Positions 464 through 55,994 of a stretch of DNA of 64,000 nucleotides are shown piece after piece. Each line of letters begins with the position of its first letter. Position 1 is the stretch's first letter. Location: contig OZ251231.1 in the NCBI GenBank assembly GCA_965240325.2, positions 930,001 to 994,000 on the forward strand, read 5' to 3'. Both the position numbers and the translations under genes were made by a program. This DNA is from Rebecca billardiae RCC1528. Its lineage: Eukaryota; Protista; Haptophyta. Below the pieces are notes generated by a model. That model ran no database searches. It saw nothing but the letters and a program-made list of their open reading frames with translations, and was not told the DNA's origin.

Positions 464-2719
464 CTAGTTCGGGGCCATACCCTCCAGTCGGCGGTCATCA
501 TTCAACGTGATGTCACCTGGGAGGAACATCTCGTCGAGAGCCTTGCCCGGGGCGACCATGGGCAGGCAGATGTCGGGCGTCACCTTGAAGTCGACCAGCA
601 CCGGCCCCGCGGTGGCGAACATCTTCTCCACGCACGCACTCAGCTCGGACTCGTGCTCGCAGCTCCACGCGTTGATGCCAAACGAGCGCGCGAGCATCGC
701 GTAGTCCGGGTTCACGTTGTCCGTGGCGACAAGACGCCCGTCAAAGAAGAGCTTCTGCCAGACATGAACCATCTGCTGCCTGCCGTCGTTCAGGATGAAC
801 ATCTTCAGCGGGAGGCCGTGCTCTGCGACCGTGCCCAGGTCGTTGAGCGTCATGTTGAAGGACGAGTCACCGTCGATCAGCACGACGGTCGAATCCGGCC
901 GCGAGAGCTGCGCGCCGACGGCCGCCGGCAGCCCAAAGCCCATCGTGCCCAGTGATCCCGACGTGACGATCGTGCGAGGCTGCGACCAGCGGTAGAATTG
1001 GGCCGCCTGCGCGCGCGGCGCGCGGGGTGTGTGCGCGAGCCCAGCGCGCATGCGTCTCAGCGCATCTCCGTGGCACCACGCAGGCACACTGGCGCGCGGA
1101 GGCAGCGCCTGGACGGGAGTGCTCGGGCAGGCGCACGCACGCGCACCATCATCTGGTGGTTACCCACTCCGGTCGAGACCACGAGCTTCTCCTGGAGCGG
1201 CCCCTTGGTCACCTGGTACATGCGCTCGATCACCTGCTGCGTCTTGAGCCGGCCGTCGGGCGCGGGCGTGTACGCGAACGGCACCTGCGCCTTCCACGCG
1301 CGCAGCTGCTCGTGCCATGCGGTGCGCGGCTGGTGCTGGACGAGCGGCAGTAGCGCCTCGATCGCCTCGCCGCAGTCGCCCTCGATGGCGTGCGTCGGCT
1401 GCACGACGCGCCCGATCTGCGAGCGCTCGATGTCGAAGTGCACGATGCCGCCGCGCCCCTCGCGCTCGGCCGCCTTGGCCGCGGGCGCGTACTTTGGAAG
1501 CACGCCCGTCGTGCGGTCGTCAAAGCGCGAGCCGACGGCGAGGATCAGGTCGGCGTTCTGAACGGCGTAGTTGGCGTACGCGGCGCCGTGCATGCCGAGC
1601 ATGTGCAGGGAGAGGTCGTCATGCTCGTCGAACGTGCCCATCGCGTGGAGCGTGGTGGTGACGGGGATGTTGGACGCGTGCGCGAGCGCGCGCAGCGAGT
1701 CCGCGTAGTCGACCGCGCCCTGGCCGACGTACAGGATCGGCCGCTCGCACTCGTTCATCAGCTTCGCGACGGGGGCCAGAATGGACGCGTCGATGGGCGG
1801 CGTGGGCGGCTGCGGCACGACGGGCAGCGACTCGCCCTGCAGCAGCGCGACCATCACGTCCTTGGGCAGGTCGAGGTGCACCGGGCCCTTCTTGCCCTGC
1901 TGCGCGACCGCAAACGCCTCGTGCACGACCGAGCGCACCTCCTCGACCGTGCGCACCTGGTACGACCACTTGCAGCACGGCCGGGTGAGGTCGACAGCCG
2001 AGCACTCCTGGAACGCGTCCGTGCCGACGACACTCGTCGGCACCTGCCCCGACAGCGCGACGATCGGCACCGAGTCGCCCTTGGCGTCCTGCAGCGGCGT
2101 GATGATGTTGGTGAGGCCTGTACGGCGCGCGCGAGCGGTGGAGGCCAGGTGGGTTCGGGGCACGCGGCCAGCGCGAGCGACGGGCGAGACGCGCTGCGGT
2201 GGGACGACGATGCATGGCGCGCGCCGTGCCAGCGTGCGCGCGCGCGCGCGGCGCACCTGGGCCTGAGGTCGTGAGAATCACACCGACACGGCCCGACGCC
2301 TTGGCGTATCCCTCGGCGGCTAGGGTGAGGGGCGCGGCGCGTGCGCGGCGGCGGCGGCGCGATGAGCGCGCGGCGCGCGCGCGCGGCGCGCGCGCGTGCG
2401 CGTGCGCTTGCGCACCGTGACCGCAGCATTGCTCCGAGCGGTTCATGACGAAGTTGATGGGGGATGCGTGGAACGCGTCGAGCACGGGCAGGTTCGCGCC
2501 GCCCGAGTACCCAAAGACGTGCTCCACGCCGCACTCGACGAGGGCGTCGTGCAGGATGCGCCCGCCCGGCATGGGCGCGAGCTCGTCCGCAGCGTCATCC
2601 GCGAGCGTGGCGAAGGCCCGGCGGGCGACAGGTGCGAACTGTGCGGCGCGGAGCGACACGTGCGATCTTCGTCCCAGCCGGGCGGCCACCCGCGGGCGCG
2701 CCACGCCGAGCGCAAGCAT
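464..2719 (-). CDS. ILV2: Acetolactate synthase (AHAS) catalytic subunit, 4 exons (predicted introns 2320-2415, 2118-2256, 1007-1146), with an N-terminal organelle transit-like peptide
   Basis: Spliced motifs VFGYSGGA, EQCCGH|AAEGYAKASG, TSGPG|LTN, GQVPTSVVGTDAFQE, GPVHLDLPKDV, MLGMHG, RFDDR, GVGNHQM|AAQFY, SGSLGTMGFGLPAAVGA and the ThDP motif DGDSSF...LND. GT-AG junctions restore the frame. Confidence 0.96.
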
Positions 2720-3100
2720 CGCCGCCCCCGTCCACAAGCCACGACTCCACGAGGTCGGCCCGCCCCTGAAAATGATTCATCGATGGCGTCCGGCACAGGC
2801 TGACGAAATCTGCGTGATCTCATCTCAAATCATCCGGCTCAACAGAAAGTCCGGCAAAAGTCCGGAATACCGTTGGAGAGTCCGGAGACGTCCGGGTCAG
2901 TGCGGCGGGTACAGCCCCGCAGCCCACTGAACCGGGTTCGGCACTGCGCCAGCCACTCAGCGGCGAGCGCGGGCCTTCGGCGTTTGAAAATGACGGCTGC
3001 GCTGGCGAGCAAGCCGGGCTGCAAGGGGCCTCGCTGGGGCCCAGCGCAAGCCCCAGTGCAGCCCACTGCGCACACCCACAGTCGACACAGCAGCGAAGCC

Positions 3101-3492
3101 ATGGCTAAGGTGCGCGCCGCCGCCTTCGCGCGCCGCGCGTGCGAACGCGAGCGCGTTCGTCGGGCGCATCGCGGGTGGGGGGGTGCGTGGACACCCGCCG
3201 CATCGCCCCGCGCGCTCGGCGCCCCGCGCACCGGACGTTTCGCGCCGCCGGGCGCGCACAACTGACTTCGGCCGAGCTCGCGCCCACTCGCGCACAGGCA
3301 GCGAAGGGCAGCAAGGCGGAGGGCAAGAAGGGCAGCGGCAAGAAGCTGTCGGGCTTCATGAAGTTCTCCAAGGAGAACCGCGAGAAGGTCAAGGAGGAGA
3401 ACCCGGGCATCACGTTCGGCCAGATCGGCAAGAAGCTCGGCGAGATGTGGCGCGCGCTGGACGACGCCGAGAAGGCAAAGTACAACGCCTAA
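3101..3492 (+). CDS. Small single HMG-box protein (NHP6/HMGB-like), 2 exons (intron 3110-3297), ~67 aa
   Basis: ATGGCTAAG|GTGCGC...ACTGAC...GCACAG|GCA; [48 protein letters not shown] is a canonical HMG box. Confidence 0.93.
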
Positions 3493-5095
3493 AGAAGCTC
3501 CCGGGCTTCGGCTGGCCACGTGGGAATCGACTTCGCGGACCGTCTCGTCCACGCGCTCGACTCTTGCTCCGCTCTTCGCTCCACCAACGAGCTGCTGGGC
3601 TGCCGCAGCCGCGCGTGCTGACTTGCTCACGCTTCGCGTTTCAAACGCAAGCCAACGCCCGTCGCCGCCTCGGTTCGTGGTCGTCGACGAACGCCGACGG
3701 CCACGCGTTCTGGCCGCACGCAGCATGGGCGGCGTCATCGCGCCTGCTGTGCGCTTGGCGAATACGCTGCGGGCTCAGACAACTTCCAACCAGGACAACT
3801 TGCGGTCGCTCGGCACGGTCCTGCGAAGGCAGATCTTCCCTCGTGACTCGGCCGACGAGCGCCCCTTGCCACAGTATTTATTGACTACGCAAGGTCCACG
3901 ACCGACCGCGCCGTCTGCTTCAGAAAGATAACCAGTCCAAGCTTCATACCTAGATACGCCACTAGCGTCACGCCGTCACCCGTCGCGACGTGCCATGTCA
4001 CATGATAATAATTTCAATGATATGTCGGTTCGGCTTCGTCAGAAGTTCAGGCGCGGCTGGCCGGGTGGCGGGCCAGTGGCAGTGGAAACTCAGCGGCCTG
4101 CTCCGGCACCGGCTCCGAGTGGGCGAGTGGCGTCAGCGGTCAGTGACAGTGGCCGGAGTCCGCCTGAGCAGTCCGGTCGCCGAGTCCCGGCGAGACGGTG
4201 CCGAGTGGCGAGTCCGCGCGGCCCGCGGGTCCCCGCCCCTGACGGACCCGGTCCCGCGCCCCCGGACCCGCCGGGGCCACTGTCTACTCAGTACTCACTA
4301 ACTACTAAACTAGTCACACTAGACCTAAGACCTACGTGTCCCGGAGTCCCGGGCTTACCGTGCCGTGCCGGCCTCCGTCAGTCTCAGTCACGTACCCGGA
4401 CCCGGTGCCCGCAGACGGCGGCAGAGTCAGACGCAGGCTCACGCAGACGCAGTCACGCAGGGTCCGCACGCAGCGCCGCCGGCCAGCGGCAGACAGACAG
4501 GGCAGTCACGCCAGTCACCTCACACCTGCCCCGTTACCGGGCGGTCGCCGTCCGGGCTCCGGCCACTCGGGCCAGTCCCGACTCGACAGTCACGCGACGC
4601 AGTGCCAGGCCCAGTGGCCTTCCGGGGGGGTGAGGGGGCGCCGGACCGCCGGCCGCGGGCCCCGCGGCCCGCCGATCCGAGGTGGGATAGCCGGGTACCG
4701 ACTAGGTAGTAGGCCACGCGCATGTCGGCATGCCGACTGGGCGTCGACAGCCGTGCCAGTGACCATGACCCGCCGACCGTGTCCCTGCCACGCCGACAAT
4801 CAGGACACTCGACTGCAGGCGAGTGAGGCGAGTCGCGCTCAGCCGTGGAACGCACAGGTCGGACGAGAACGCCCTGCAGCCACCCGCTCGCTCGGTCACA
4901 GCTCCAGCGCCCAGCTGTGAGCTGTGAGCAGGCGCGGTAGCACGAGCGACTGTGTCTGCGACACAGACAGGCAGCACGAACTCGAAGGCAAGCGCGCCAG
5001 TCGTGAGTGAGCCATGGATCCAGCCAGATGGACAGTGCGCCGAAAGCATGGGTTGTGGACGTTGAGCTACGTCGCCGGAGGTGGAGACAGACCGC

Positions 5096-6557
5096 CTACA
5101 AGTCGTCGTCGTCGTCTGCGCCCACATCCTCGTCGTCGTCGTCGTCCACGATGAAGCCCTCCATCTCATCCTCGTCGCCGTCTGCAGGCGCCGGGCGGGC
5201 GGGGCGCGCGCGTGGGGTGCTGTTAGGATCGGGCAGGGAGAAGAAGGTTCGAAGGGTGCGCGCGGCTGCAGTAGCGCACCATCGGCGGACATCTCAGCTT
5301 CTTCCTCATCGTCGTCGTCGTCGTCATCGCCCAGCCGCCTTCGACCGGCGCCCGCGCGCGAGCGCGACGCGGGGCGGCGAGCGGAGCTCGAGCGCGGCCG
5401 CGCTGGCGCGCGTCGGCGCGGTGCGCGATTGCCAGGGGTGGAGGCCCGGCGCTTGCGCCCGGTGACCTGCGCGCGGATGGCACCCAGGTCACCCGCGTCG
5501 ACGTCGTCATCGCCCTCCAAGAAGCCCGAGTCCCAGCCGCCCGCGCCGCCCCCGCCGAATTGTGAGGTGCGCCGCTCCTGCGAGACGAGCAGCCGCTTCT
5601 TCTCCTCCTCCAGCTGCACACGCACGCACGCGCGCGCGTGCGTGGCGTGGGCGGCGGCAAAGGAGCTGGTCAGTCGCCGCCGCGAGCCTGCGCGGGCAGC
5701 GAGCGCGGCGGTGCGCGCATGGCGGCGAGGCGTACCCGCTCGAGCGCCTCCTTGGCCTTCTCCGGGTCGTCGATGGTGGAGGTCATGCGGATCTTGCGCT
5801 CCTTGCCGGTCGCCTTCTCAGCGACCATCTTGGCCAGCAGCTTCTGGTGCGTCTGCGAGTCACGCGTCGCCGGCTGGAAGTGGAGACGGTGGGAGAGCAC
5901 GCCGTGGCACTCGATGAGGCCGGTGTGCTTCGCAAAGATGTGCGAGTGCTCGCTGCCCATCGTCTGCTCCGTCGCCAGCAGCACCTCGGAGCCGACGTGC
6001 AGCGTGAGCGAGCCGTCAGACCAGCGCACCATGCGCGAGTTGGACTCCTTCACTGGCCGGCCCTCCGCGTCCTTCTCGCTGCCGTACCGCCAGCGGATCA
6101 CGTTCTCGCGCCCGCTGTGTGGCATCCTCGCCTCCTCGTCCGGATCGTACGTCTGCGGGTCGAACGGGCGCGGCTCGATGCCCAGGATGTTGGGCAGGCG
6201 CACCAGGCAGAGCTGGCCGGGCCCCGGCCTCGGCAGCTCGGGCACCTCCACGTGCAGCGGCGGGGCACGGCCGACGTCCTCGGCCGCGGAGCGCTCATGA
6301 CGATCACGCGCGTCCTCATCATCAGCCTCGTCTGAATCGCGCTCGCCGAACAGGTCCTCATCGAGAGCCGATGCGTGCGCTCGCGAGCCCTCGCCCTCAT
6401 CCGGGCGTGCAGCTGGCTGCGCAGCTGCCTCCGCCTCATCCTCATCCTCGGAACCGAAGAGGTCCTCAAACGTCGCGGCCGCCGGCTCAGCTGAAGGCTC
6501 AGCCGAAGGCTGATCGGCTCCATCGACGGCCTCCTCCGCGTCCGGCCCCTCCTCCAT
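5096..6557 (-). CDS. LEO1: RNA polymerase-associated PAF1 complex subunit Leo1, 3 exons (predicted introns 5614-5735, 5182-5279)
   Basis: Leo1 domain: PNILGIEPRPFDPQTY...ENVIRWR...ESNSRMVRWSDGSLTLHVGSE; acidic N- and C-termini (DLFG repeats, GFIVDDDD). Confidence 0.92.
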
Positions 6558-49858: not shown

Positions 49859-51406
49859 CTAAGGCTGCCCCATGTGGCTGTGCTGCTCAGTGTCATCGTC
49901 CGATGATGCCAGTGCGAGGTGCGCTTCGAGGGGGAGGTGGTCCGATGGATGGACACATGACGGCAGCGCGCCGTGAGCTGCGAGCTCGGACTCGTCCGGG
50001 AGGTCGAGAACCGCGCGCGCACGCACGCCTTGCTCCACCAGCACGTAGTCGAGGGTGCCCTTGAAATCGGGCGTGTAGTTGGTGTGCACGGGCTCGCGGC
50101 CGAGCACTTGCCGGTACGCGCTCTCCAGGCGAAGGGCGTGCGAGAGCGCTCGTGGGCGCAACGGCGGCTGCGGGGGTGCTGCGTTGGCGGCGGGCGCGTC
50201 CTCTCTCGCAGCCGCCGCCCGCAGCGCTGTCACCGGCACAAAGTGGGCCGGGTGATGCGGGTGCGATGGGTCGAGGGTGCGCGATCGCATCAGCTCATAC
50301 ACACCGCTCTCGGGGCACAGGCCAGCGGCACTCGGTGTCGCGCCGCCACTGCCGCCACCTTCTTCGCGCTGTGGTGTCGAGTTGAGGTCCGCGCCGATCA
50401 CGACAGGCCACGCCGTGCGCGGCGCGCCATCGGCTGCGCTCACCTCCGCGCGGAACGCGTGCAGCGCGCGGCACAGCAGCTCAGCCTGCAGGGCCTTCAG
50501 ACCCGGCACGCGTGGGTCCCAGTGCAGGTGCGAGTTGGCGACGCAGAGGCCTCGGGCGGTGTGCTGCCCCTCGGCGTTGGCGAGACGAAGCGCGGTGAGC
50601 AGCACAATCGAGCCTCGCGCCCTCGCCTCCTCCACCACCGCTGCCCCCAGCGCGTCGCCTTCGGCCGCATCCAACACGTCCGCGAGCGGAACGGCCCGGC
50701 GCTCGGCGAGCGTGAAGCGCGCGCGCCGGTGGAACGTCGCGCAGCCGTGCGGCGCCAAGCCGCGGCGGGTGCGGCGGCAGGCCAGCATCCCGGCGTACCC
50801 AGCCGCGCGCATCGCGGGCTCCAGCTCCGCGTCGTACGCCGCAGCGTCCACCTCCTGCAGGCACAGCACGTCAGCTGTGAGCTCCTCTGTCAGCTGGCGC
50901 TTGAGCGTGCGCCAGCGGAGTGCCCAGCGGAGCGCCCACGCCGGGCAGTGGCGGTGGTACTCAGGCGAGGCGGTGGATTGCGACATGATGTTGTACGTGA
51001 CCACTCGCGCGATGACCGGCTGGGCCCCCGGCGGGCGGGGCGCGCACACAAGCTGCCGTGGTGCGCGCGGGCCAAACTCGAACACGACAGGTGCGGTCGT
51101 CCGCACCGCGCTGGGCAGGCCAGTGTCGACGCCATCGACGTTGAGAGGCGTCACGGTCAGACGGAGCTTCCGACCTACGTCAGAGTCCGTCGGCGTGTAC
51201 GCGATATCGCCGCCCACGCGTACCCAGGGCTCGTCTGGCGAGCGCCCTTCGCGCATCCACTCCGCGCGGTGCGCGTCCTGCGCAACGTGCATCATCATGA
51301 GCTTGGGGCAGAGCTGCACACCGACGATGGGCGGAGCGGAAGGGAGGTGCAGCCGATGCACGACGGGCGTTGCGCGCACGTCGTCGGGCGCGCGTGGGCG
51401 CTTCAT
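49859..51406 (-). CDS. CCR4/PDE12-family exonuclease-endonuclease-phosphatase (deadenylase / 2',5'-phosphodiesterase-like)
   Basis: N-terminal WVRVG...YTPT.SDVG..LRL domain; catalytic VTYNI, LCLQEVD, ANSHLHW, GADLNS, TLDYV, PSDHLPL. Confidence 0.92.
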   Translation of the reverse strand: MKRPRAPDDVRATPVVHRLHLPSAPPIVGVQLCPKLMMMHVAQDAHRAEWMREGRSPDEPWVRVGGDIAYTPTDSDVGRKLRLTVTPLNVDGVDTGLPSAVRTTAPVVFEFGPRAPRQLVCAPRPPGAQPVIARVVTYNIMSQSTASPEYHRHCPAWALRWALRWRTLKRQLTEELTADVLCLQEVDAAAYDAELEPAMRAAGYAGMLACRRTRRGLAPHGCATFHRRARFTLAERRAVPLADVLDAAEGDALGAAVVEEARARGSIVLLTALRLANAEGQHTARGLCVANSHLHWDPRVPGLKALQAELLCRALHAFRAEVSAADGAPRTAWPVVIGADLNSTPQREEGGGSGGATPSAAGLCPESGVYELMRSRTLDPSHPHHPAHFVPVTALRAAAAREDAPAANAAPPQPPLRPRALSHALRLESAYRQVLGREPVHTNYTPDFKGTLDYVLVEQGVRARAVLDLPDESELAAHGALPSCVHPSDHLPLEAHLALASSDDDTEQHSHMGQP

Positions 51407-51688
51407 GCATGCTCGCTTGCAAGTCAGCACTACCAGCAATCACGAAACGCGGTCGCCATCGTGCAAGCCAATACATCAGTACCCCCATACTGGTACAGCA
51501 GCAATACTTTTTTACTAGAACAGACAGAGTAGAGAGAGTGACAGAGACTCCTCATCCGGTCAAGACTCATCACAGACAAGAGACGACTGTCGTCAAGTAC
51601 TGTGGTGACAACGACCGACGGCTCGTCAGATAAGTATGCTACAGTATGCTGCTGAAGACTACAGCATCACTCATCAGCGGACCTCGTG

Positions 51689-54449
51689 TCACATATGCTT
51701 GCCCTTGGCCTCCTCGTAGTCCGGGTCGTCAGACTCCTCGCCCTCAGTCGGCGACTCGTCGTCACCGCTGCCATCGAAATCAATCGCAATGAGCCGATCG
51801 GATCTGCCAGGCTGGCTGCGCGCCTCGACGCTCGGCCCGCTGCCCAGCTGGCGCGGGTACCCGCGCGCGCTCCTCCAGCTATCCACCCCTTGGAATAGCC
51901 GGCGGAGCATGCCCCAGGCGTCCGTCAGACTCCCCGCCTCCACATCCGGCCGCAACTCGTTGACCAGATCTGCGAGCGCATCTTCCGCTCGGCGCAGCGC
52001 GTGGTCGGGCGCCGGGATGGAGCCCGCCGGTGCGCTGGGGGCGCAGACCACGGCTGTCCTTGGGCTCGTGTCTCGCGGCGTGGGCTTCCTCTTCTTCGCC
52101 CCCTTGGCCGAAGGCGACTTGTTCGCCGGGGCCTCCCGTCTGCGGATGGCGTGCTCGATGGTGAGGGGCACGACCGGAGTCACCTGGCGGGTGGGTGCGC
52201 GCCCGCAGGGGCGCCGAGGGGCGCACGCGTCGGCGAGCGGTGTGCGCAGTGATGCACGGCGCTCCGGCGGCGCGGCGGTCGGGGCGAGCGCGCGCACCGC
52301 GCGGCCTGATCGCCGGGTCTCCGTGGGCAGCTCGGCGCTCGCAGGGCGTGGGCGCGCGCCCGGCAGCGCCTTGCGCGGTCGCTTGGCGCCCGAAGCGGTG
52401 GCGAGCGGCGCGTCCGAGGCCTCCGCCGGCGCACCGGCCGACTCGTCCGCTGGCGCCAGCGGTGCCGAGGACTCGGCGGCGGAGAGCAGCTCCGGCGGCG
52501 TGTTGGCGATGGCCCACTTCACCTGCGCCTGCCGCACCCTGAAGACGAGCTGCATCAGGGACAGGCCGCCACACACGCCCGCTGCAGCCGGCGCGCCGCC
52601 CGCCGCGCCGCCCGCCGTGCCGCCGCCCGGTGCGCGCGCTCGCTGCGTGAGGCGCTCCTTGGCGTGGTCGAGCTGGAGGCCGTGCTGCTCCTCGTGCAGC
52701 CGGACCCAGAACAGCGCGCCGCACGTGAGGCGCGCGTACAGCAGCTGCGCCCGAGCGGCGATCGAACGCGCGCACACGGTCAGCACGCGCACGCGACGCA
52801 GCGCGCGCGGACGGCCGCGGCCACGCCCGCGCGCAGTCGCCGCGCCGCGCGCGCACCGGCTTCGGCTTCCACTTGCGGAACTCTGCGTACGAGAGGCCAA
52901 TCTCGCTCGCCATGTCATCCTCGGTCGACAGCCCGAGATACTTGCACAGCTCGTCGTACACCGGCCGGGACGTGCCGTCGCCGCGCCCGGTCGCGATGGT
53001 GATCACCGACTCGAGCGAGACGCTGTCGCGCGACGGGTCGGCGAGCACGTCGCCCGTGAACCACGCGTGCGGCCGCCCTGCGTTGAGCACCTTCTCCTTC
53101 CAGCACACGTACGTGCCGGAGAGGCCGATGCCAGACTTGTGGAGGGTGTACCGAGTCGCGCCCTCGCGCATCAGCGCGTCCTGCAGCGGCGGCCAGCACC
53201 CGACCATCCGCCCGCGCACGCCGGGCAGCTCGATGCACTCCGCGCCACTCAGCTTGCACTTCATGTCCGGAGCCCTCGCGATCTCGCTCAGCTGCGCGAG
53301 CAGCGAGTCCCGCTCGAGCCGCAGCTGCTGGCCCTGCACGCTCGCGCGCAGCGGGCGCGCGCTCTCGTCGTCTCCAAACTCGGGGAGCGGGAAGAGCCCA
53401 GTGCCCGGCGGCAGGTACGAGGCGGCGAGCTCGTCCAAGAGGTCGTCCGGGCACACGAGGCGGCGCGGCGCGCCAACCGCCGCACCGCACCCGCCTCCGC
53501 CACCCGCGGCGGAGCTCGACGGCTCCGGCTCCGCCTGCGCGCGCTGCACGCGCGATGGAGGCGGCACAAACGCCTCCAAGTCCTTGTCATCGTACTCGAC
53601 GGTCACGCTGACGCCCCCGGACTCACTGCAGCCGCCGCACGTGTGCACAAAGGCCACGCGCCCGGGGAACCAGCGCCCCTTCGCCAGGAAGTTCGCGCTC
53701 ACGCGCTCCCCGACCCGCAGCCTCTCGGCCGGGCGCGAGCGCAGTTCCGCCGCGAGGTTCCAGTAGATGAAGCGCGTGCACCGGCTGCCGCCGCGCGCGC
53801 GCATGCTCGCGCGCACGGTGTCGACGAGCGCGTGCAGCACGCGGCCCGTGAGCTCGCGGTTCTCGCCGCAGGCGAACGGGTGTGCCGTGAGAATGCCCGC
53901 CTGCACGATGAAGCGGTCGCGGTCGCGCTCGCCGCCAAAGTCGAGTGCCGCGCCAGCGCGATCGAGGCTGACGCCACAGACGGCGCGGCTCACGGCCGCA
54001 TCGTCGAAGAGATCGTCCAGCTGCGGGCCGAAGCGGCCAATCCCCGCCCGACCGCCCACCTCGTCCACCGTGATCACGAGCAGCTCAGCAGCGCTGTCGG
54101 CCGGTCCAAGCTTCGCCTGGAAGAGCTTGGAGCCGACGCCCTTGAGGTTGTGCCGGCCGTACGTGACGTCCTTCTGGTGACCCGTGTCAAAAAGCTTGGC
54201 CAGCTCCTCCACGTAAGTGTCCGTCTCGACGACGAGGAAGGGCCCCTCGGCACGCCACGGCTCGTCCTCCGTCGGCACAGTGATTGTCTCGTGCAGGGCC
54301 ACGCGCACCTCCGAGTCAAGGCTGAGAGCGTTGTCGACGACCTCCTTGAAGGCGCTCGACAGCCGCGCGTGGACCTCCTTCTGCGGGAGCCAGCAGCTAG
54401 TCGAGGTCTGCGCAGGGCCGGCGACGACGCGCTGCTGCCCGAGCGACAT
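51689..54449 (-). CDS. Divergent MORC-like GHKL protein with an inserted Tudor-like domain; predicted introns 52745-52856 and possibly 52184-52297
   Basis: AFKEVVDNA (motif I), GRHNLKGVGSKL (motif III), LLVIT, TRFIYWNL, LAASYLP, SVQGQQL and GTYVCWKEKVL follow MORC order; Tudor-like LRVGERVSANF...GRWFPGRV...VEYDDKDLE. Confidence 0.68.
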
Positions 54450-54820
54450 GCCGAACCGGCTATTACGACGGAATCGCACGCATCAAAATCAAAATTCAGG
54501 CCATCAAATAAACCCCCAATACCGCACACTGACCGCCCGTCTGCATAGTTGCTGGCGCAAGCGCCACCGAAGCCGTCCGAAGCGCGCCGAACGCGAGCTT
54601 CGGCGGCGCCGGCGACCGCCGCGTCGGGCTGACGCCACCGCCGCTGCCTGACCGTCGTGCCGGACACTCGGACCGAGTGGTAGTAGCACGTAGAGCGACT
54701 CGTGTCTCGTAGGAGTAGGACTCCCGTCACTCCGCGGCCAGTCGCCAGCGGCCAGGCTGATCGGCTCAGCCGACGTACTCTCCCTTCGGCTCCATCCCAG
54801 GTCTTGCCGGCTGGCGAGCG

Positions 54821-55630
54821 TCAGCCCCGGGACCGCTTGAAGCTGGCGGACACCCATTTTCCAGCTGTCGTGTCCCACTTCTTCCCATTGGGCGGGCGGC
54901 CTCGGGGCTGCGCGTAGCCGCCGTCGGCGGGGGGCTCCGATGGCCGCGCGGGCTTCTCTGGAGCCGTGTAATCCGGGTCGTCGACGTACTCGCCGCGCTC
55001 CGCGTCCCAGAGCTTGCCCTGCGGCGGACGACCCTTCGGCCGCGTGTGCCCCTTTGGCGGCTGCTCTCGCGCGGGCTTCTCTGGAGCCGTGTAGTCCGGG
55101 TCGTCGACGTACTCGCCGCGCTCTGCGTCCCAGAGCTTGCCCTGCGGCGGACGACCCCTCGGCCGTGTGTGCCCCTTTGGCACCTCTCGCGCGGGCTTCT
55201 CTGGAGCCGTGTAATCCGGGTCGTCGACGTACTCGCCACGCTCGGCGTCCCAGAGCTTGCCCCGTGGCGGAAAACCGCGCGGCCGCTTGTGCCCCTTCGG
55301 CGGCTGCTCTCGCGCGGGCTTCTCTGGAGCCGTGTAATCCGGGTCGTCGACGTACTCGCCGCGCTCCGCGTCCCAGAGCTTGCCCTGCGGCGGACGACCC
55401 TTCGGCCGCGTGTGCCCCTTTGGCGGCTGCTCTCGCGCGGGCTTCTCTGGAGCCGTGTAATCCGGGTCGTCGACGTACTCGCCGCGCTCCGCGTCCCAGA
55501 GCTTGCCCCGCGGCGGACGACCCTTCGGCCGCGTGTGCCCCTTTGGCGGCTGCTCTTCGGGAGACGAGTCGGATTCTCCCTCGGACTCACTCCCACTCTC
55601 GCTCACCTCGATCGCGCGTTTTGGTCCCAT
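54821..55630 (-). CDS. Repeat protein with five 40-41-aa units plus one divergent unit, each an AT-hook-like (K/R)GRPP followed by GK.WD...G.(Y/W)V
   Basis: DNA unit spacing 123/120/123/123 bp; acidic Ser-rich N-terminus; the frame is preserved through the indel. Confidence 0.8.
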   Translation of the reverse strand: MGPKRAIEVSESGSESEGESDSSPEEQPPKGHTRPKGRPPRGKLWDAERGEYVDDPDYTAPEKPAREQPPKGHTRPKGRPPQGKLWDAERGEYVDDPDYTAPEKPAREQPPKGHKRPRGFPPRGKLWDAERGEYVDDPDYTAPEKPAREVPKGHTRPRGRPPQGKLWDAERGEYVDDPDYTAPEKPAREQPPKGHTRPKGRPPQGKLWDAERGEYVDDPDYTAPEKPARPSEPPADGGYAQPRGRPPNGKKWDTTAGKWVSASFKRSRG

Positions 55631-55994
55631 GATCGGGTGCGAGCTCGGGCTTGGCGGTGCGCGGCGGTGGTGGCGGCGGCGGCAGCGGTGGGCCCCCCCG
55701 AACGAACGGCGAAAACTCAGAACTCTCGGAGGCCCCGCGTGGCCGCGCCGCCGCGCGCGCGGCAAGACAACTTTTAAAAATAAAACTGTGCCTGCCCGCC
55801 GCTGCCCGTGCGGGCGCGGTCGGGTCACCGGTCACTGGTCAGCAGTGCCTCCGGACTCACAGTGCCTCCGGACTCACATCGAATTGGTCCGGTTGGCTGT
55901 GGGGGTTTTAACCGTCGTCGCGTTATTCTGCTCCTAAACTCGGCTGTGTGGAGGCCGGTTGGCGCCTTGGCGGACGGCTCCCTACCACCGCCTC

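What the first reader, a model, noticed from the sequence alone, without database searches (positions are those of the whole stretch)
52857..54449. MORC-like GHKL protein with a Tudor-like domain inside the ATPase module and no DxGxG motif
Seen: MORC landmarks appear in order (AFKEVVDNA; GVGSK; TRFIYWNL; LAASYLP; GTYVCWKEKVL). The expected motif II DxGxG is replaced by LVVETDTYVEE, and a Tudor-like domain (~53550-53730) sits between TRFIYWNL and the S5-like part. Established: animal MORCs put a CW finger after the GHKL-S5 module, MORC2 has a coiled-coil insertion within it, and DxGxG binds the ATP adenine. Inference: a possibly catalytically altered MORC that reads methylated histones through an inserted reader.
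Basis: partly seen in the sequence, partly recalled or inferred. Interest (0 to 1): 0.72.

Follow-up and report, generated by a model that had tools for sequence, protein, structure and literature searches.

The report
MORC-like ATPase with inserted Tudor domain
This alga has a real two-exon gene for a very divergent cousin of the MORC chromatin ATPases. It keeps most of the catalytic residues but lacks the usual adenine-binding glycine motif, and it carries a Tudor "mark-reader" domain spliced into the ATPase domain itself, a layout I did not find described.

Summary
Window 54449..52857 (minus strand) is exon 1 of a two-exon gene for an 882-aa protein. The intron is 52856..52745 and exon 2 is 52744..51689.

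- **Sequence searches:** Pfam, PDB sequence search and PADLOC find nothing for the ATPase part.
- **Fold:** the predicted N-terminal domain matches MORC4/3/2 ATPase structures first (Foldseek E about 1e-7; VIA Z 16-19, rmsd 2.5-3 Å over about 200-219 residues). SMCHD1 (Z 12-13) and HSP90 (about 10) score lower.
- **Second domain:** it aligns with MORC S5/transducer models in the ESM Atlas.
- **Family:** about 20 unnamed proteins from marine metagenomes, Logan assemblies and one MMETSP transcriptome. Across them the catalytic Glu36, Mg-binding Asn40, lid Gly104-x-Gly106-x-Lys108, motif IV Thr225 and the transducer "switch" Lys are invariant or nearly so.
- **Motif II:** no member has DxGxG. The window has D77-T78-Y-V.
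- **Insert:** residues 244-302 are a 53BP1/SETDB1-type Tudor domain by profile evidence. It is present only in this protein's clade.

Loss of catalysis and histone-methyl reading remain inferences. Conservation argues for a working, remodelled nucleotide site rather than a dead one. I call it a new variant of a known kind.

The parts
52857..54449 (-). CDS exon 1 (531 aa), ATG at 54449; GHKL domain, Tudor insert and the first part of the transducer/S5-like domain
   Evidence: ORF and translation. 44-49% identity to MMETSP protein P0002 over the whole exon.
52745..52856 (-). 112-nt phase-0 GT-AG intron
   Evidence: Sequence. P0002 runs straight from ...WKPKK to RLFANLTLGALFWVRL. Metagenome contig L018 has an intron at the same codon.
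51689..52744 (-). CDS exon 2 (351 aa plus stop at 51689-51691); end of the transducer-like domain, then a basic/acidic low-complexity tail
   Evidence: Its first 88 aa are 55% identical to P0002 (E 4e-25). Translation.
53745..54422 (-). GHKL (Bergerat-fold) domain core, aa 10-235
   Evidence: AF2 pLDDT 65-92. Foldseek top 21 hits are all MORC3/4/2 (E 1.6e-7 to 2e-5). VIA Z 16-17.
54318..54353 (-). Motif I, AFKEVVDNALSL (Glu36 general base, Asn40 Mg ligand)
   Evidence: E36 and N40 are 20/20 in the family. hhalign pairs them with E/N of a MutL homologue of the same genome. MORC2 Glu35/Asn39 per PMC5811534.
54204..54239 (-). Remodelled motif II, FLVVETDTYVEE (D77-T78-Y79-V80 in place of DxGxG)
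   Evidence: T78 is 19/20; position 77 is D in 10/20. No D.G.G at this place in any member and none in the window protein.
54105..54161 (-). Motif III / ATP-lid end, YGRHNLKGVGSKLFQAKLG (G104, G106, K108, G115)
   Evidence: G98, G104, G106 and G115 are 20/20; K108 is K or R in 20/20. Compare the MORC2 G2 box and Lys105.
53754..53780 (-). Motif IV strand, CTRFIYWNL (Thr225)
   Evidence: T225 is 17/18 and F227 is 17/18. Predicted strand 223-230.
53544..53720 (-). Inserted Tudor domain, aa 244-302
   Evidence: - Matches Tudor_5-positive domains of the same genome at E 1e-5.
- More than 130 multi-Tudor proteins hit only this segment.
- The profile of the insert plus relatives hits 53BP1, PHF20, SGF29 and KDM4A Tudors (E 1e-5 to 1e-3).
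- 21 of 24 aligned relatives hit Pfam Tudor_5.
- It is absent from the other family clades.
53463..53543 (-). Low-complexity Ala/Gly/Ser/Pro linker after the Tudor, aa 303-329
   Evidence: Sequence. pLDDT below 40. Not conserved with P0002.
52857..53453 (-). Transducer/S5-like domain, first part (aa 333-531), with LAASYLPP, VQG and GTYxxxKEKVxN blocks
   Evidence: Conserved family blocks. In the orthologue model this domain has pLDDT 70-90. It aligns with MORC models carrying Morc6_S5 (308-328 aligned residues reaching query 589-642).
52505..52744 (-). Transducer-like domain, last part (exon 2 aa 1-80), with GALFWVRL...LQLDHAKERL and the RVRQAQVKW helix
   Evidence: Conserved in all full-length members. 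P0102/P0174 hit Pfam DNA_mis_repair weakly at this motif (E 0.06).
52658..52660 (-). Codon of the candidate switch lysine (exon 2 Lys29; motif V of GHL ATPases)
   Evidence: K in 14/15 aligned members. It lies in a loop between two predicted strands in model 2. Role of this Lys per PMC6620310 and PMC5811534.
51692..52504 (-). C-terminal tail: disordered, with basic KRPRK (52370-52384) and KKRKP (52082-52096) patches, a short helix conserved with P0002 (AEDALADLV) and an acidic end
   Evidence: Translation and coordinates. Only weak local similarity to P0002. No Pfam hit. That the basic patches are nuclear localisation signals is inference.

Best explanation
The gene encodes the haptophyte-type representative of a small, unannotated eukaryotic family of MORC-like GHL ATPases. 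The module is a GHKL nucleotide-binding domain plus an S5/transducer domain.

**Nucleotide site.** The module keeps the general-base Glu, the Mg-binding Asn, the GxGxK end of the ATP lid, the motif IV Thr and the transducer switch Lys. Its motif II is remodelled: D-T-x-V/I replaces DxGxG.

**Insertion.** In this lineage a single 53BP1/SETDB1-type Tudor domain, followed by a flexible linker, was inserted into the surface loop between the motif IV strand and the last helix of the GHKL domain.

**Most likely working (inferred).** This is a nuclear, chromatin-bound clamp of the MORC type that still binds and turns over a nucleotide through an altered base pocket. The built-in Tudor tethers it to, or gates it by, a methylated lysine or arginine mark. 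The analogy is the CW finger that couples MORC3/MORC4 to H3K4me3.

**What is shown and what is inferred.**
- Shown: gene model, family, fold, motif conservation, Tudor homology, clade-specific insertion.
- Inferred: nucleotide turnover, dimerisation, nuclear location, ligand of the Tudor.
For: **Gene model**
-; the transcript-derived orthologue P0002; intron position conserved in L018.

**Fold**
- AF2 model of exon 1: residues 10-235 at pLDDT 65-92.
- Foldseek: top 21 PDB hits are all MORC3/4/2 ATPases, E 1.6e-7 to 2e-5, ahead of SMCHD1, HSP90, sacsin, MutL and topo II.
- VIA: Z 15.7-16.9 for MORC against 11.8 for SMCHD1 and about 10 for HSP90.
- The orthologue model gives the same ranking: Z 17.9-18.7, rmsd 2.5-3.0 Å over 205-219 residues.
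- VIA alignments start at model residue 14 against MORC2 residue 13, which puts E36/N40 on MORC2 Glu35/Asn39.

**Second domain**
- Atlas shape search: best match is the MORC3 cluster (zf-CW + Morc6_S5 + HATPase_c_3), 328 aligned residues spanning 31-589. Plant MORC clusters align 308 residues spanning 30-642.
- Weak DNA_mis_repair hits fall at the switch-Lys motif.

**Other support**
- Language-model features point to HATPase_c_3/HATPase_c clusters.
- 4 of 21 members hit HATPase_c_3 below threshold.
- Conservation counts.
- Tudor evidence.
- By the alignment to 53BP1, and my recollection of its cage residues (W1495, Y1502, F1519, D1521, Y1523), the insert has F254, F261, Y286, D288 and D290 at those positions.
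- The insertion is clade-specific.
Against: - No sequence method places the ATPase part in a known family at significance. Pfam gives nothing for the window protein even at E up to 10. PDB phmmer and hmmsearch give nothing. hhalign against one MutL homologue is significant only around motif I.
- The two motif II glycines, which in MORC2 give the lid its flexibility next to the adenine-binding Asp68, are replaced by Tyr and Glu. Nucleotide binding may therefore be lost or changed.
- The Tudor and its linker were modelled at pLDDT below 50 in both models, so the barrel and its position relative to the lid are not seen.
- The S5 fold of the second domain rests on whole-model alignments with low TM (0.29-0.40). 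It was not folded as a domain on its own.
- The homodimer prediction gave no verdict.
- No RNA run was listed for this organism.
Confidence: 0.62

Rival explanations
1. Pseudo-ATPase scaffold. The family has the MORC fold but lost nucleotide binding when motif II lost its glycines. The protein would act as a Tudor-targeted, nucleotide-independent chromatin scaffold, or as a regulatory partner of another factor.
For: No DxGxG in any of about 20 members. In MORC2, Gly70/Gly72 and Asp68 of motif II shape the lid and the adenine pocket (PMC5811534). In half the family even the Asp position is H/Y/E/Q/P. All Pfam GHKL models fail or stay below threshold.
Against: At about 25% overall identity the family still keeps every other catalytic element: Glu36 20/20, Asn40 20/20, Gly104/Gly106 20/20, Lys/Arg108 20/20, Thr225 17/18 and the switch Lys 14/15. 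It also keeps an invariant Thr78 within motif II. Such conservation is hard to explain without a bound phosphate-bearing ligand.
Confidence: 0.28
2. Not MORC-related in particular. It would be a divergent member of another GHL branch (MutL, HSP90/sacsin/Tiamat, topo VI-B or SMCHD1) that only resembles MORC in a predicted model.
For: All GHL ATPases share the fold, and SMCHD1, HSP90, sacsin, MutL and GyrB do appear lower in the lists. The only Pfam transducer hit is to the MutL model PF01119, and it is weak. Predicted models can be biased towards well-represented templates.
Against: MORC2/3/4 lead by 4-6 Z units and 3-5 orders of magnitude in E-value in two independent models. The Atlas search returns MORC3, plant MORC and Kelch-MORC-type clusters first. 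PADLOC, which I took to include Tiamat, gives nothing. Tiamat/sacsin-type proteins carry a >1000-residue DUF3684, for which there is no room here.
Confidence: 0.08
3. Artefact: a spurious long ORF of a GC-rich genome, a pseudogene or a transposon fragment.
For: The genome is 68-75% G+C here and throws up long ORFs in every frame, for example a 919-aa antisense ORF at 51789..54548. The public gene call P0001 reads through the intron into a wrong frame.
Against: There is a 44-49% identical protein from a transcriptome with the same architecture. The intron position is conserved. About 20 homologues show motif-level conservation. The domains fold with confidence. The gene is single-copy in the genome.
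Confidence: 0.02

Closest known systems
MORC3 / MORC4 ATPase-CW cassette (PDB 5ix1, 6o1e, 7k7t)
   Same: - Best structural matches of the GHKL domain (Z 16-19).
- Two-domain GHKL + S5/transducer module.
- Motif I Glu/Asn, GxGxK lid end, motif IV Thr and transducer Lys.
- A histone-mark reader built into the same polypeptide next to the ATPase.
   Different: - Sequence similarity is undetectable by Pfam or HMMER.
- Motif II lacks both glycines.
It is inserted inside the GHKL domain (after motif IV) rather than appended after the S5 domain.
- No CW finger is present.
MORC2 (PDB 5of9; PMC5811534)
   Same: An ATPase module interrupted by a large insertion. MORC2 also has a Tudor-chromo-like domain (TCD), and the window's insert even gives faint hits to Pfam Chromo_MORC2_6th. 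Its weak GHKL ATPase works as a dimerising DNA clamp.
   Different: - MORC2's insertion is an 80-residue coiled coil in the beta-sheet of the transducer-like domain (residues 282-361). Here the insertion is a Tudor barrel in a GHKL-domain loop, upstream of the helix that aligns with MORC2 residues up to 267.
- The MORC2 TCD lies far C-terminal, outside the module.
- MORC2 has a canonical Asp68-x-Gly70-x-Gly72.
SMCHD1 GHKL-transducer module (PDB 6mw7; PMC6620310)
   Same: A divergent eukaryotic GHL chromatin ATPase with motif I-IV and a motif V Lys. It is the second-best structural match (Z 11.8-13.1).
   Different: [quoted passage not shown] None of these is present here.
53BP1 / SETDB1 / PHF20 / SGF29-type single Tudor domains
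   Same: The profile of the insert and its algal relatives hits these Tudors (E 1e-5 to 1e-3). The pattern VGxxVxAxF/Y...GxW/Y-Y/F-PG...YDDGD matches. Four of five positions that I recall as the 53BP1 cage residues are aromatic or acidic.
   Different: - The fifth cage position (53BP1 Tyr1523, as I recall it) is Asp in the whole algal family.
- The window's copy has an extra Cys/Gly/Ser loop between strands.
- On its own it stays below Pfam thresholds (E 0.13).
- The ligand is unknown.

Membership tests
GHKL / GHL ATPase superfamily (Bergerat fold) | Alpha/beta sandwich Bergerat fold of the N-terminal domain | tested here: met
   Two AF2 models. All significant Foldseek and VIA hits are GHKL proteins, led by MORC at Z 16-19.
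GHKL / GHL ATPase superfamily (Bergerat fold) | Motif I: general-base Glu and Mg-binding Asn (ExxxN) | tested here: met
   E36 and N40 are 20/20 in the family. They align with E/N of a MutL homologue and with MORC2 Glu35/Asn39 by the VIA register.
GHKL / GHL ATPase superfamily (Bergerat fold) | Motif II: DxGxG (adenine-binding Asp and G1 box) | tested here: not met
   The window has D77-T78-Y79-V80-E81. There is no D.G.G in the protein and none at this position in any family member.
GHKL / GHL ATPase superfamily (Bergerat fold) | Motif III: glycine-rich G2 box at the end of the ATP lid, with a phosphate-binding Lys | tested here: met
   G104-V-G106-S-K108...G115. The glycines are 20/20 and position 108 is K or R in 20/20.
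GHKL / GHL ATPase superfamily (Bergerat fold) | Motif IV: Thr lining the adenine pocket | tested here: met
   T225 is 17/18, at the start of predicted strand 223-230.
MORC family | S5/transducer-like second domain with the switch Lys (motif V) | tested here: inconclusive
   - For: Lys conserved 14/15 in a loop of a confidently modelled alpha/beta domain.
- For: Atlas alignments of 308-328 residues to Morc6_S5-bearing models.
- For: weak PF01119 hits at the motif.
- Against: no Pfam Morc6_S5 hit, hhalign not significant, and the domain was not folded or searched on its own.
MORC family | Recognition by the family's curated models (Pfam HATPase_c_3 plus Morc6_S5 above gathering score) | tested here: not met
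   No hit for the window protein at E up to 10. The best in the family is P0094 at 18.8 bits against a cut-off of 25. Morc6_S5 was not found in the whole genome, though that search rang in none of its control genomes either, so it is uninformative.
MORC family | ATP-dependent N-terminal dimerisation and weak ATPase activity | not testable with these tools
   Complex prediction with two copies plus ATP/Mg gave no verdict (0.29 against a mark of 0.32). This is evidence neither for nor against.
MORC family | C-terminal coiled coil for constitutive dimerisation | not tested
   The tail is mostly low-complexity. It shares one short helix with P0002. No coiled-coil prediction was run.
Tudor ('royal family') domains | Significant profile similarity to solved or curated Tudor domains | tested here: met
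   The profile of the insert plus 23 relatives hits 53BP1 (9.5e-6), PHF20, SGF29 and KDM4A. 21 of 24 members hit Tudor_5. The insert matches Tudor_5-positive paralogues at 1e-5. The insert alone is sub-threshold.
Tudor ('royal family') domains | Five-stranded SH3-like barrel | tested here: inconclusive
   Both AF2 models give pLDDT below 50 for the insert, because the alignments used had no depth there.
Tudor ('royal family') domains | Aromatic cage for a methylated Lys/Arg | tested here: inconclusive
   By the alignment to 53BP1 and my recollection of its cage residues: F254, F261, Y286 and D288 are retained, and D290 replaces Tyr1523. Binding was not tested.

The most novel reading that the evidence does not exclude
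The family is a working GHL NTPase whose remodelled motif II (an invariant Thr, no G1 box) changes which nucleotide or ligand it binds, or how the lid closes. In the haptophyte-type clade, the Tudor inserted a few residues after the adenine-pocket Thr acts as an allosteric gate. Clamp closure would then happen only on chromatin carrying a particular methyl mark. That would be a reader built into the catalytic domain rather than appended to it.
Probability: 0.2. Interest if true: 0.8.

Novelty: new variant of a known kind. Interest (0 to 1): 0.6.

Why it matters
MORC, SMCHD1 and MutL-type GHL ATPases are central to gene silencing and genome defence. Outside animals, plants and apicomplexans they are little studied.

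This locus matters for three reasons:
- It defines a family that curated models miss entirely, in ecologically important marine algae.
- The family is a natural experiment on motif II. Every catalytic element except the G1 box is conserved, so purified protein can show directly whether DxGxG is dispensable, or whether base specificity has changed.
- The Tudor-in-GHKL architecture gives a simple, testable model of how a histone or protein methyl mark could be wired into an ATP-driven clamp.

I found no canonical MORC in this genome. That search was limited, but it raises the possibility that this protein fills the MORC role in the lineage.

Tried and rejected
**Searches of the ATPase part that returned nothing**
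- Pfam on exon 1, exon 2 and P0002: no hit.
- PDB sequence search with the protein and with the family profile: no MORC hit.
- PADLOC on 21 members: nothing, so not a Tiamat-type or known defence GHKL. The Tiamat preprint was read and set aside.

**Profile comparisons**
- hhalign of the family against a MutL homologue of the same genome: only motif I aligns (E 0.007, probability 5.5%).
- The C-terminal profile against the MutL transducer is not significant. It does pair the two switch-Lys motifs.

**Searches for more members or context**
- The word-based search with the family profile added only two members.
The homologues' contigs look eukaryotic: 57-64% G+C, with SET, ATG8 and IQ neighbours. 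A giant-virus origin was dropped.
- Own genome: the HATPase_c_3 hits examined are three HSP90s and MutL-type proteins. The weak hit L013 (22.2 bits) was not examined. Morc6_S5 was not found, but that search also rang in no control genome, so it is weak evidence.

**Other attempts**
- Complex prediction for a GHKL homodimer with ATP/Mg: no verdict.
- The look-up of sequencing runs: no RNA run was listed.
- An alignment mixing Tudor fragments with family members (A5) misaligned the S5 region and was not used for folding.

- The contiguous orthologue P0002:1-660 was folded instead.
Full report
**1. What is at the coordinates**

The window is 56-79% G+C, measured in 2-kb windows. It comes from a 72-Mb, 41-contig assembly, at C14:930001-994000. 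An earlier follow-up of this scan called the organism a haptophyte-type alga (s1-336730); I did not test that.

At 52857/52856 the frame meets a GT. Read straight on, it continues as an Arg/Ala-rich nonsense frame. That read-through is what the public gene call P0001 (856 aa) does.

A GT-AG intron of 112 nt (52856..52745) joins codon ...KPKP to LLYARLTCGALFWVRLHEEQHGLQLDHAKERL in another frame. Three things support this splice:
- The transcriptome-derived protein P0002 (MMETSP, 847 aa) is 44% identical over all of exon 1. It then runs without a break into RLFANLTLGALFWVRLNEEAHGLHLDQAKEHL.
- The first 88 residues of exon 2 are 55% identical to P0002 (E 4e-25).
- A JGI metagenome contig from a third relative (L018) has an intron after the same ...RPKK codon, followed by LLYAKVTCGALFWVRLNEAEHELQLDQAKE.

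The product is therefore 531 + 351 = 882 aa. Exons were searched by reference, and the contiguous orthologue stood in for the spliced protein.

**2. Sequence searches and the family**

Pfam finds nothing in exon 1, exon 2 or P0002. PDB sequence search finds nothing. The word-based search finds only the self call and P0002.

The exhaustive HMMER search of 1.84 billion representatives gave 157 hits of two kinds.
- More than 130 proteins, many with 5-22 matched stretches, match only residues about 238-320.
- About 18 proteins of 550-800 aa match the N-terminal 240 residues, and in alignment also the C-terminal half. A profile search added two more.

All of these are unnamed or "hypothetical". They come from TARA/ENA and JGI metagenomes and from Logan assemblies. 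Two contigs that I looked at are gene-dense, 57-64% G+C, with SET, ATG8, IQ and GIY-YIG neighbours. IMG/VR gave no relative. I take them to be nuclear genes of marine protists; the taxa were not determined.

None of these proteins reaches a Pfam threshold. Four of 21 give sub-threshold HATPase_c_3 hits (best E 0.0017). Two give a weak hit to the MutL transducer model PF01119.

**3. Motifs**

In the 21-row alignment A6 the following are invariant or nearly so:

| Position | Conservation |
|---|---|
| E36, N40 | 20/20 |
| S43 | 19/20 |
| T78 | 19/20 |
| G98, G104, G106, G115 | 20/20 |
| K108 | K or R in 20/20 |
| R139, G141 | 20/20 |
| D145 | 19/20 |
| T225, F227 | 17/18 |
| Y345 | 18/18 |
| G445 | 17/17 |
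| K453 | 15/17 |
| Lys of LQLDHAKERL (exon 2) | 14/15 |

I compared these with the MORC2 active site as described in PMC5811534:

| MORC2 | Window protein |
|---|---|
| Glu35 (general base) | E36 |
| Asn39 (Mg) | N40 |
| Asp68 (adenine N6) | D77 |
| Gly70, Gly72 (G1 box) | Y79, E81 |
| Gly101, Gly103, Lys105 (G2 box, alpha-phosphate) | G104, G106, K108 |
| Thr197 (adenine ring) | T225 |
| Lys427 of the transducer-like domain | the exon 2 Lys |

The register is supported by the structural alignments, which start at model residue 14 against MORC2 residue 13.

There is no D.G.G anywhere in the window protein, and none at the motif II position in any family member. Position 77 is Asp in half the family, including this clade. 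It is His, Tyr, Glu, Gln or Pro in the rest. The following Thr is invariant.

**4. Fold**

AF2 on exon 1 with the 15-row alignment gave pLDDT 65-92 for residues 10-235 and below 50 for the rest.
- Foldseek against PDB: the top 21 hits are all MORC3, MORC4 or MORC2 ATPase structures (E 1.6e-7 to 2.3e-5, probability 1.0). SMCHD1 follows (1.7e-3), then HSP90, sacsin, MutL and topo II at E above 0.04.
- VIA-align: Z 15.7-16.9 for ten of the eleven MORC entries listed (the eleventh 13.9; rmsd about 3 Å for most, about 200 aligned). SMCHD1 scores 11.8 and HSP90/GRP94 about 10.

The second fold job used the contiguous orthologue P0002:1-660 with 21 rows. The aim was to have the whole module, including the part encoded by exon 2, in one chain.
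- The GHKL domain and the C-terminal domain (440-655) came out at pLDDT 70-90. The Tudor and linker stayed below 50.
- The ranking was the same: MORC4/2/3 at Z 17.9-18.7 (one further MORC2 entry 16.2), rmsd 2.5-3.0 Å for all but one over 205-219 residues; SMCHD1 13.1; HSP90 about 10.
- The ESM-Atlas shape search returned the MORC3 cluster first (zf-CW + Morc6_S5 + HATPase_c_3; 328 residues aligned across query 31-589). Plant MORC clusters followed (308 residues across 30-642), along with a Kelch-bearing cluster whose listed Pfam families include no GHKL or MORC model.

The GHKL domain alone accounts for about 210 aligned residues. The extra 100-120 must come from the second domain, so that domain is transducer/S5-like.

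The candidate switch Lys (P0002 K615) lies in a loop between two predicted strands. In P0102 and P0174 the same motif (VDVNPKKTEVRL) is what hits the MutL transducer model.

This is good but not decisive evidence for the S5 domain. TM-scores are low (0.29-0.40) because of the 180 disordered residues. hhalign against a single MutL homologue is not significant.

Language-model features independently point to HATPase_c_3/HATPase_c clusters (0.92).

**5. The insert**

Residues 244-302 (53544-53720) align with a 55-residue repeat, VGxxVEANYxGxGRWYPGxIxxVHxDGTxDIxYDDGDxExxVxP. This repeat occurs up to 22 times per protein in the hits.

It also occurs twice in a large gene of this genome on contig C37. 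Those two copies hit Pfam Tudor_5 (49 bits, cut-off 31), BAHCC1-like Tudor and Crb2 Tudor.

Further evidence for Tudor identity:
- A profile of the insert plus 23 relatives hits solved Tudor domains: 53BP1 (E 9.5e-6), PHF20/PHF20L1, SGF29, KDM4A, TDRD3 and SETDB1.
- 21 of the 24 sequences hit Tudor_5, and 15 hit Agenet.
- The insert alone is sub-threshold (Tudor_5 E 0.13, Chromo_MORC2_6th 0.15).
- Its language-model neighbours are Tudor_3, Tudor_5 and Agenet clusters at 0.84, which is a lead only.

The alignment to 53BP1 lets me map the cage. The 53BP1 cage residues are from my own recollection, not from a tool.

| 53BP1 cage residue (recalled) | Window protein |
|---|---|
| W1495 | F254 |
| Y1502 | F261 |
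| F1519 | Y286 |
| D1521 | D288 |
| Y1523 | D290 |

Four of five positions keep an aromatic or acidic character.

**6. Where the insert sits and when it arose**

Tudor-less family members have about 25 residues between the motif IV strand (TRFxYxNL) and the helix LxxxLxxxYxP. In the window protein and P0002 this loop holds the Tudor plus a low-complexity linker.

The helix after the insert (aa 335-345) aligns with MORC2 residues up to 267, which is the end of the GHKL domain (1-265 per PMC5811534). The insertion is therefore in the GHKL domain, close in sequence to the adenine-pocket Thr. It is not in the transducer beta-sheet, where MORC2's CC1 (282-361) is inserted.

A maximum-likelihood tree of 16 full-length rows gives four clades. 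The two Tudor-bearing proteins form one clade (support 89/83) among three Tudor-less ones. The simplest reading is a single gain in this lineage.

The fragment P0007/L018 begins in an acidic linker like that of the Tudor-bearing proteins. It probably belongs to the same clade, but its contig is cut.

The gene is single-copy in the genome. I found no canonical MORC there. The HATPase_c_3 hits I examined are three HSP90s and MutL-type proteins, and one weak hit (L013, 22.2 bits) was not examined. Morc6_S5 gave nothing, but that search also found nothing in its controls.

**7. Mechanism**

Shown:
- a MORC-like two-domain GHL module with a remodelled motif II;
- a Tudor-family insert;
- a basic/acidic disordered tail with KRPRK and KKRKP patches.

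Inferred:
- **Nucleotide turnover.** The general base, Mg ligand, phosphate-binding lid end, adenine-pocket Thr and switch Lys are held invariant at about 25% identity. On that basis the family most likely still binds a nucleotide and uses it for a lid and transducer movement. Such movement drives N-terminal dimerisation in other GHL proteins (PMC6620310; PMC5811534).
- **Changed specificity.** The motif II Asp and the neighbouring Gly enforce ATP specificity in SMCHD1. The changed motif could therefore alter base specificity or lid dynamics rather than abolish binding.
- **Role of the Tudor.** By analogy with the CW finger of MORC3/MORC4, the Tudor would target or gate the clamp by a methyl mark. 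The relevant structures are the ATPase-CW cassettes with H3K4me3 (PDB 5ix1). MORC4 activity depends on its CW and on DNA binding (abstract of PMC7596504).

I put about 0.55 on an active NTPase against 0.3-0.35 on a pseudo-enzyme, and about 0.4 on a histone methyl-lysine ligand.

The homodimer prediction with ATP/Mg gave no verdict and counts neither way. No RNA run was listed for this organism. Expression is supported only for the orthologue, which comes from a transcriptome.

**8. Comparison and novelty**

It works like, and is structurally nearest to, MORC. I do not file it as a MORC family member, for three reasons:
- A defining motif (DxGxG) is absent.
- The curated MORC models do not recognise it.
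- The S5 test is inconclusive.

It is best described as a distinct, unannotated MORC-like GHL family, with a clade-specific Tudor-in-GHKL architecture. My literature searches found MORC proteins with CW, coiled-coil, a C-terminal tudor-chromodomain and Kelch additions. None had a reader domain inserted in the GHKL domain. That search was limited to open-access text.

Verdict: new variant of a known kind; interest about 0.6.

Noticed in passing
window 54821-55828 (minus strand), repeats at 54945-55556: The gene immediately upstream on the same strand encodes a 335-aa protein. It is built from five 123-bp (41-aa) tandem repeats, 92% identical, each with a basic KGRPPxGKLWDAERGEYVDDPDYTAPEKPARE unit. 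Pfam DUF4834 scores 34.7 bits for the whole protein. The DDPDY string recurs at the very C-terminus of the MORC-like protein (…ESDDPDYEEAKGKHM).
   Followed up: partly
window 49859-51439 (minus strand): The downstream neighbour is an endonuclease/exonuclease/phosphatase-fold protein. Exo_endo_phos hits at E 1e-12. A weak PDE12-like N-terminal hit and an AIR9 Ig-like hit suggest a CCR4/PDE12-type deadenylase or phosphodiesterase.
   Followed up: no
window 51879-54479 (minus strand) and 51789-54548 (plus strand): The public gene call for this locus (P0001/P0003, 856 aa, Logan) reads through the intron into a wrong frame for 325 residues. A 919-aa antisense ORF covers the same DNA. In this GC-rich genome, ORF length alone is no guide to genes.
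   Followed up: yes
L005 (G000:C37:520000-529000), ORF 2553-5669 minus strand: A large gene with two tandem Tudor_5-type domains that are the closest in-genome relatives of the insert. The adjacent frame encodes a large ATPase-like region. This is probably the giant Tudor-bearing ATPase gene noted earlier in this scan (s1-336730). A third Tudor match lies in a 5391-aa open frame on C25:965353-965517.
   Followed up: partly
L014 (TARA scaffold, 13.4 kb) and L017 (Logan contig): Tudor-less family members sit in very gene-dense contigs of 57-64% G+C. Most neighbours have no Pfam hit; the exceptions are GIY-YIG, DUF6356, SET, ATG8 and IQ. The source organisms were not identified.
   Followed up: partly
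window 52580-52640 (exon 2, aa 36-59): An 18-residue Gly/Ala-rich stretch (RAPGGGTAGGAAGGAPAAAGVCGG) is absent from the orthologue P0002. It could be coding low-complexity sequence or a small in-frame intron. This was not resolved.
   Followed up: no
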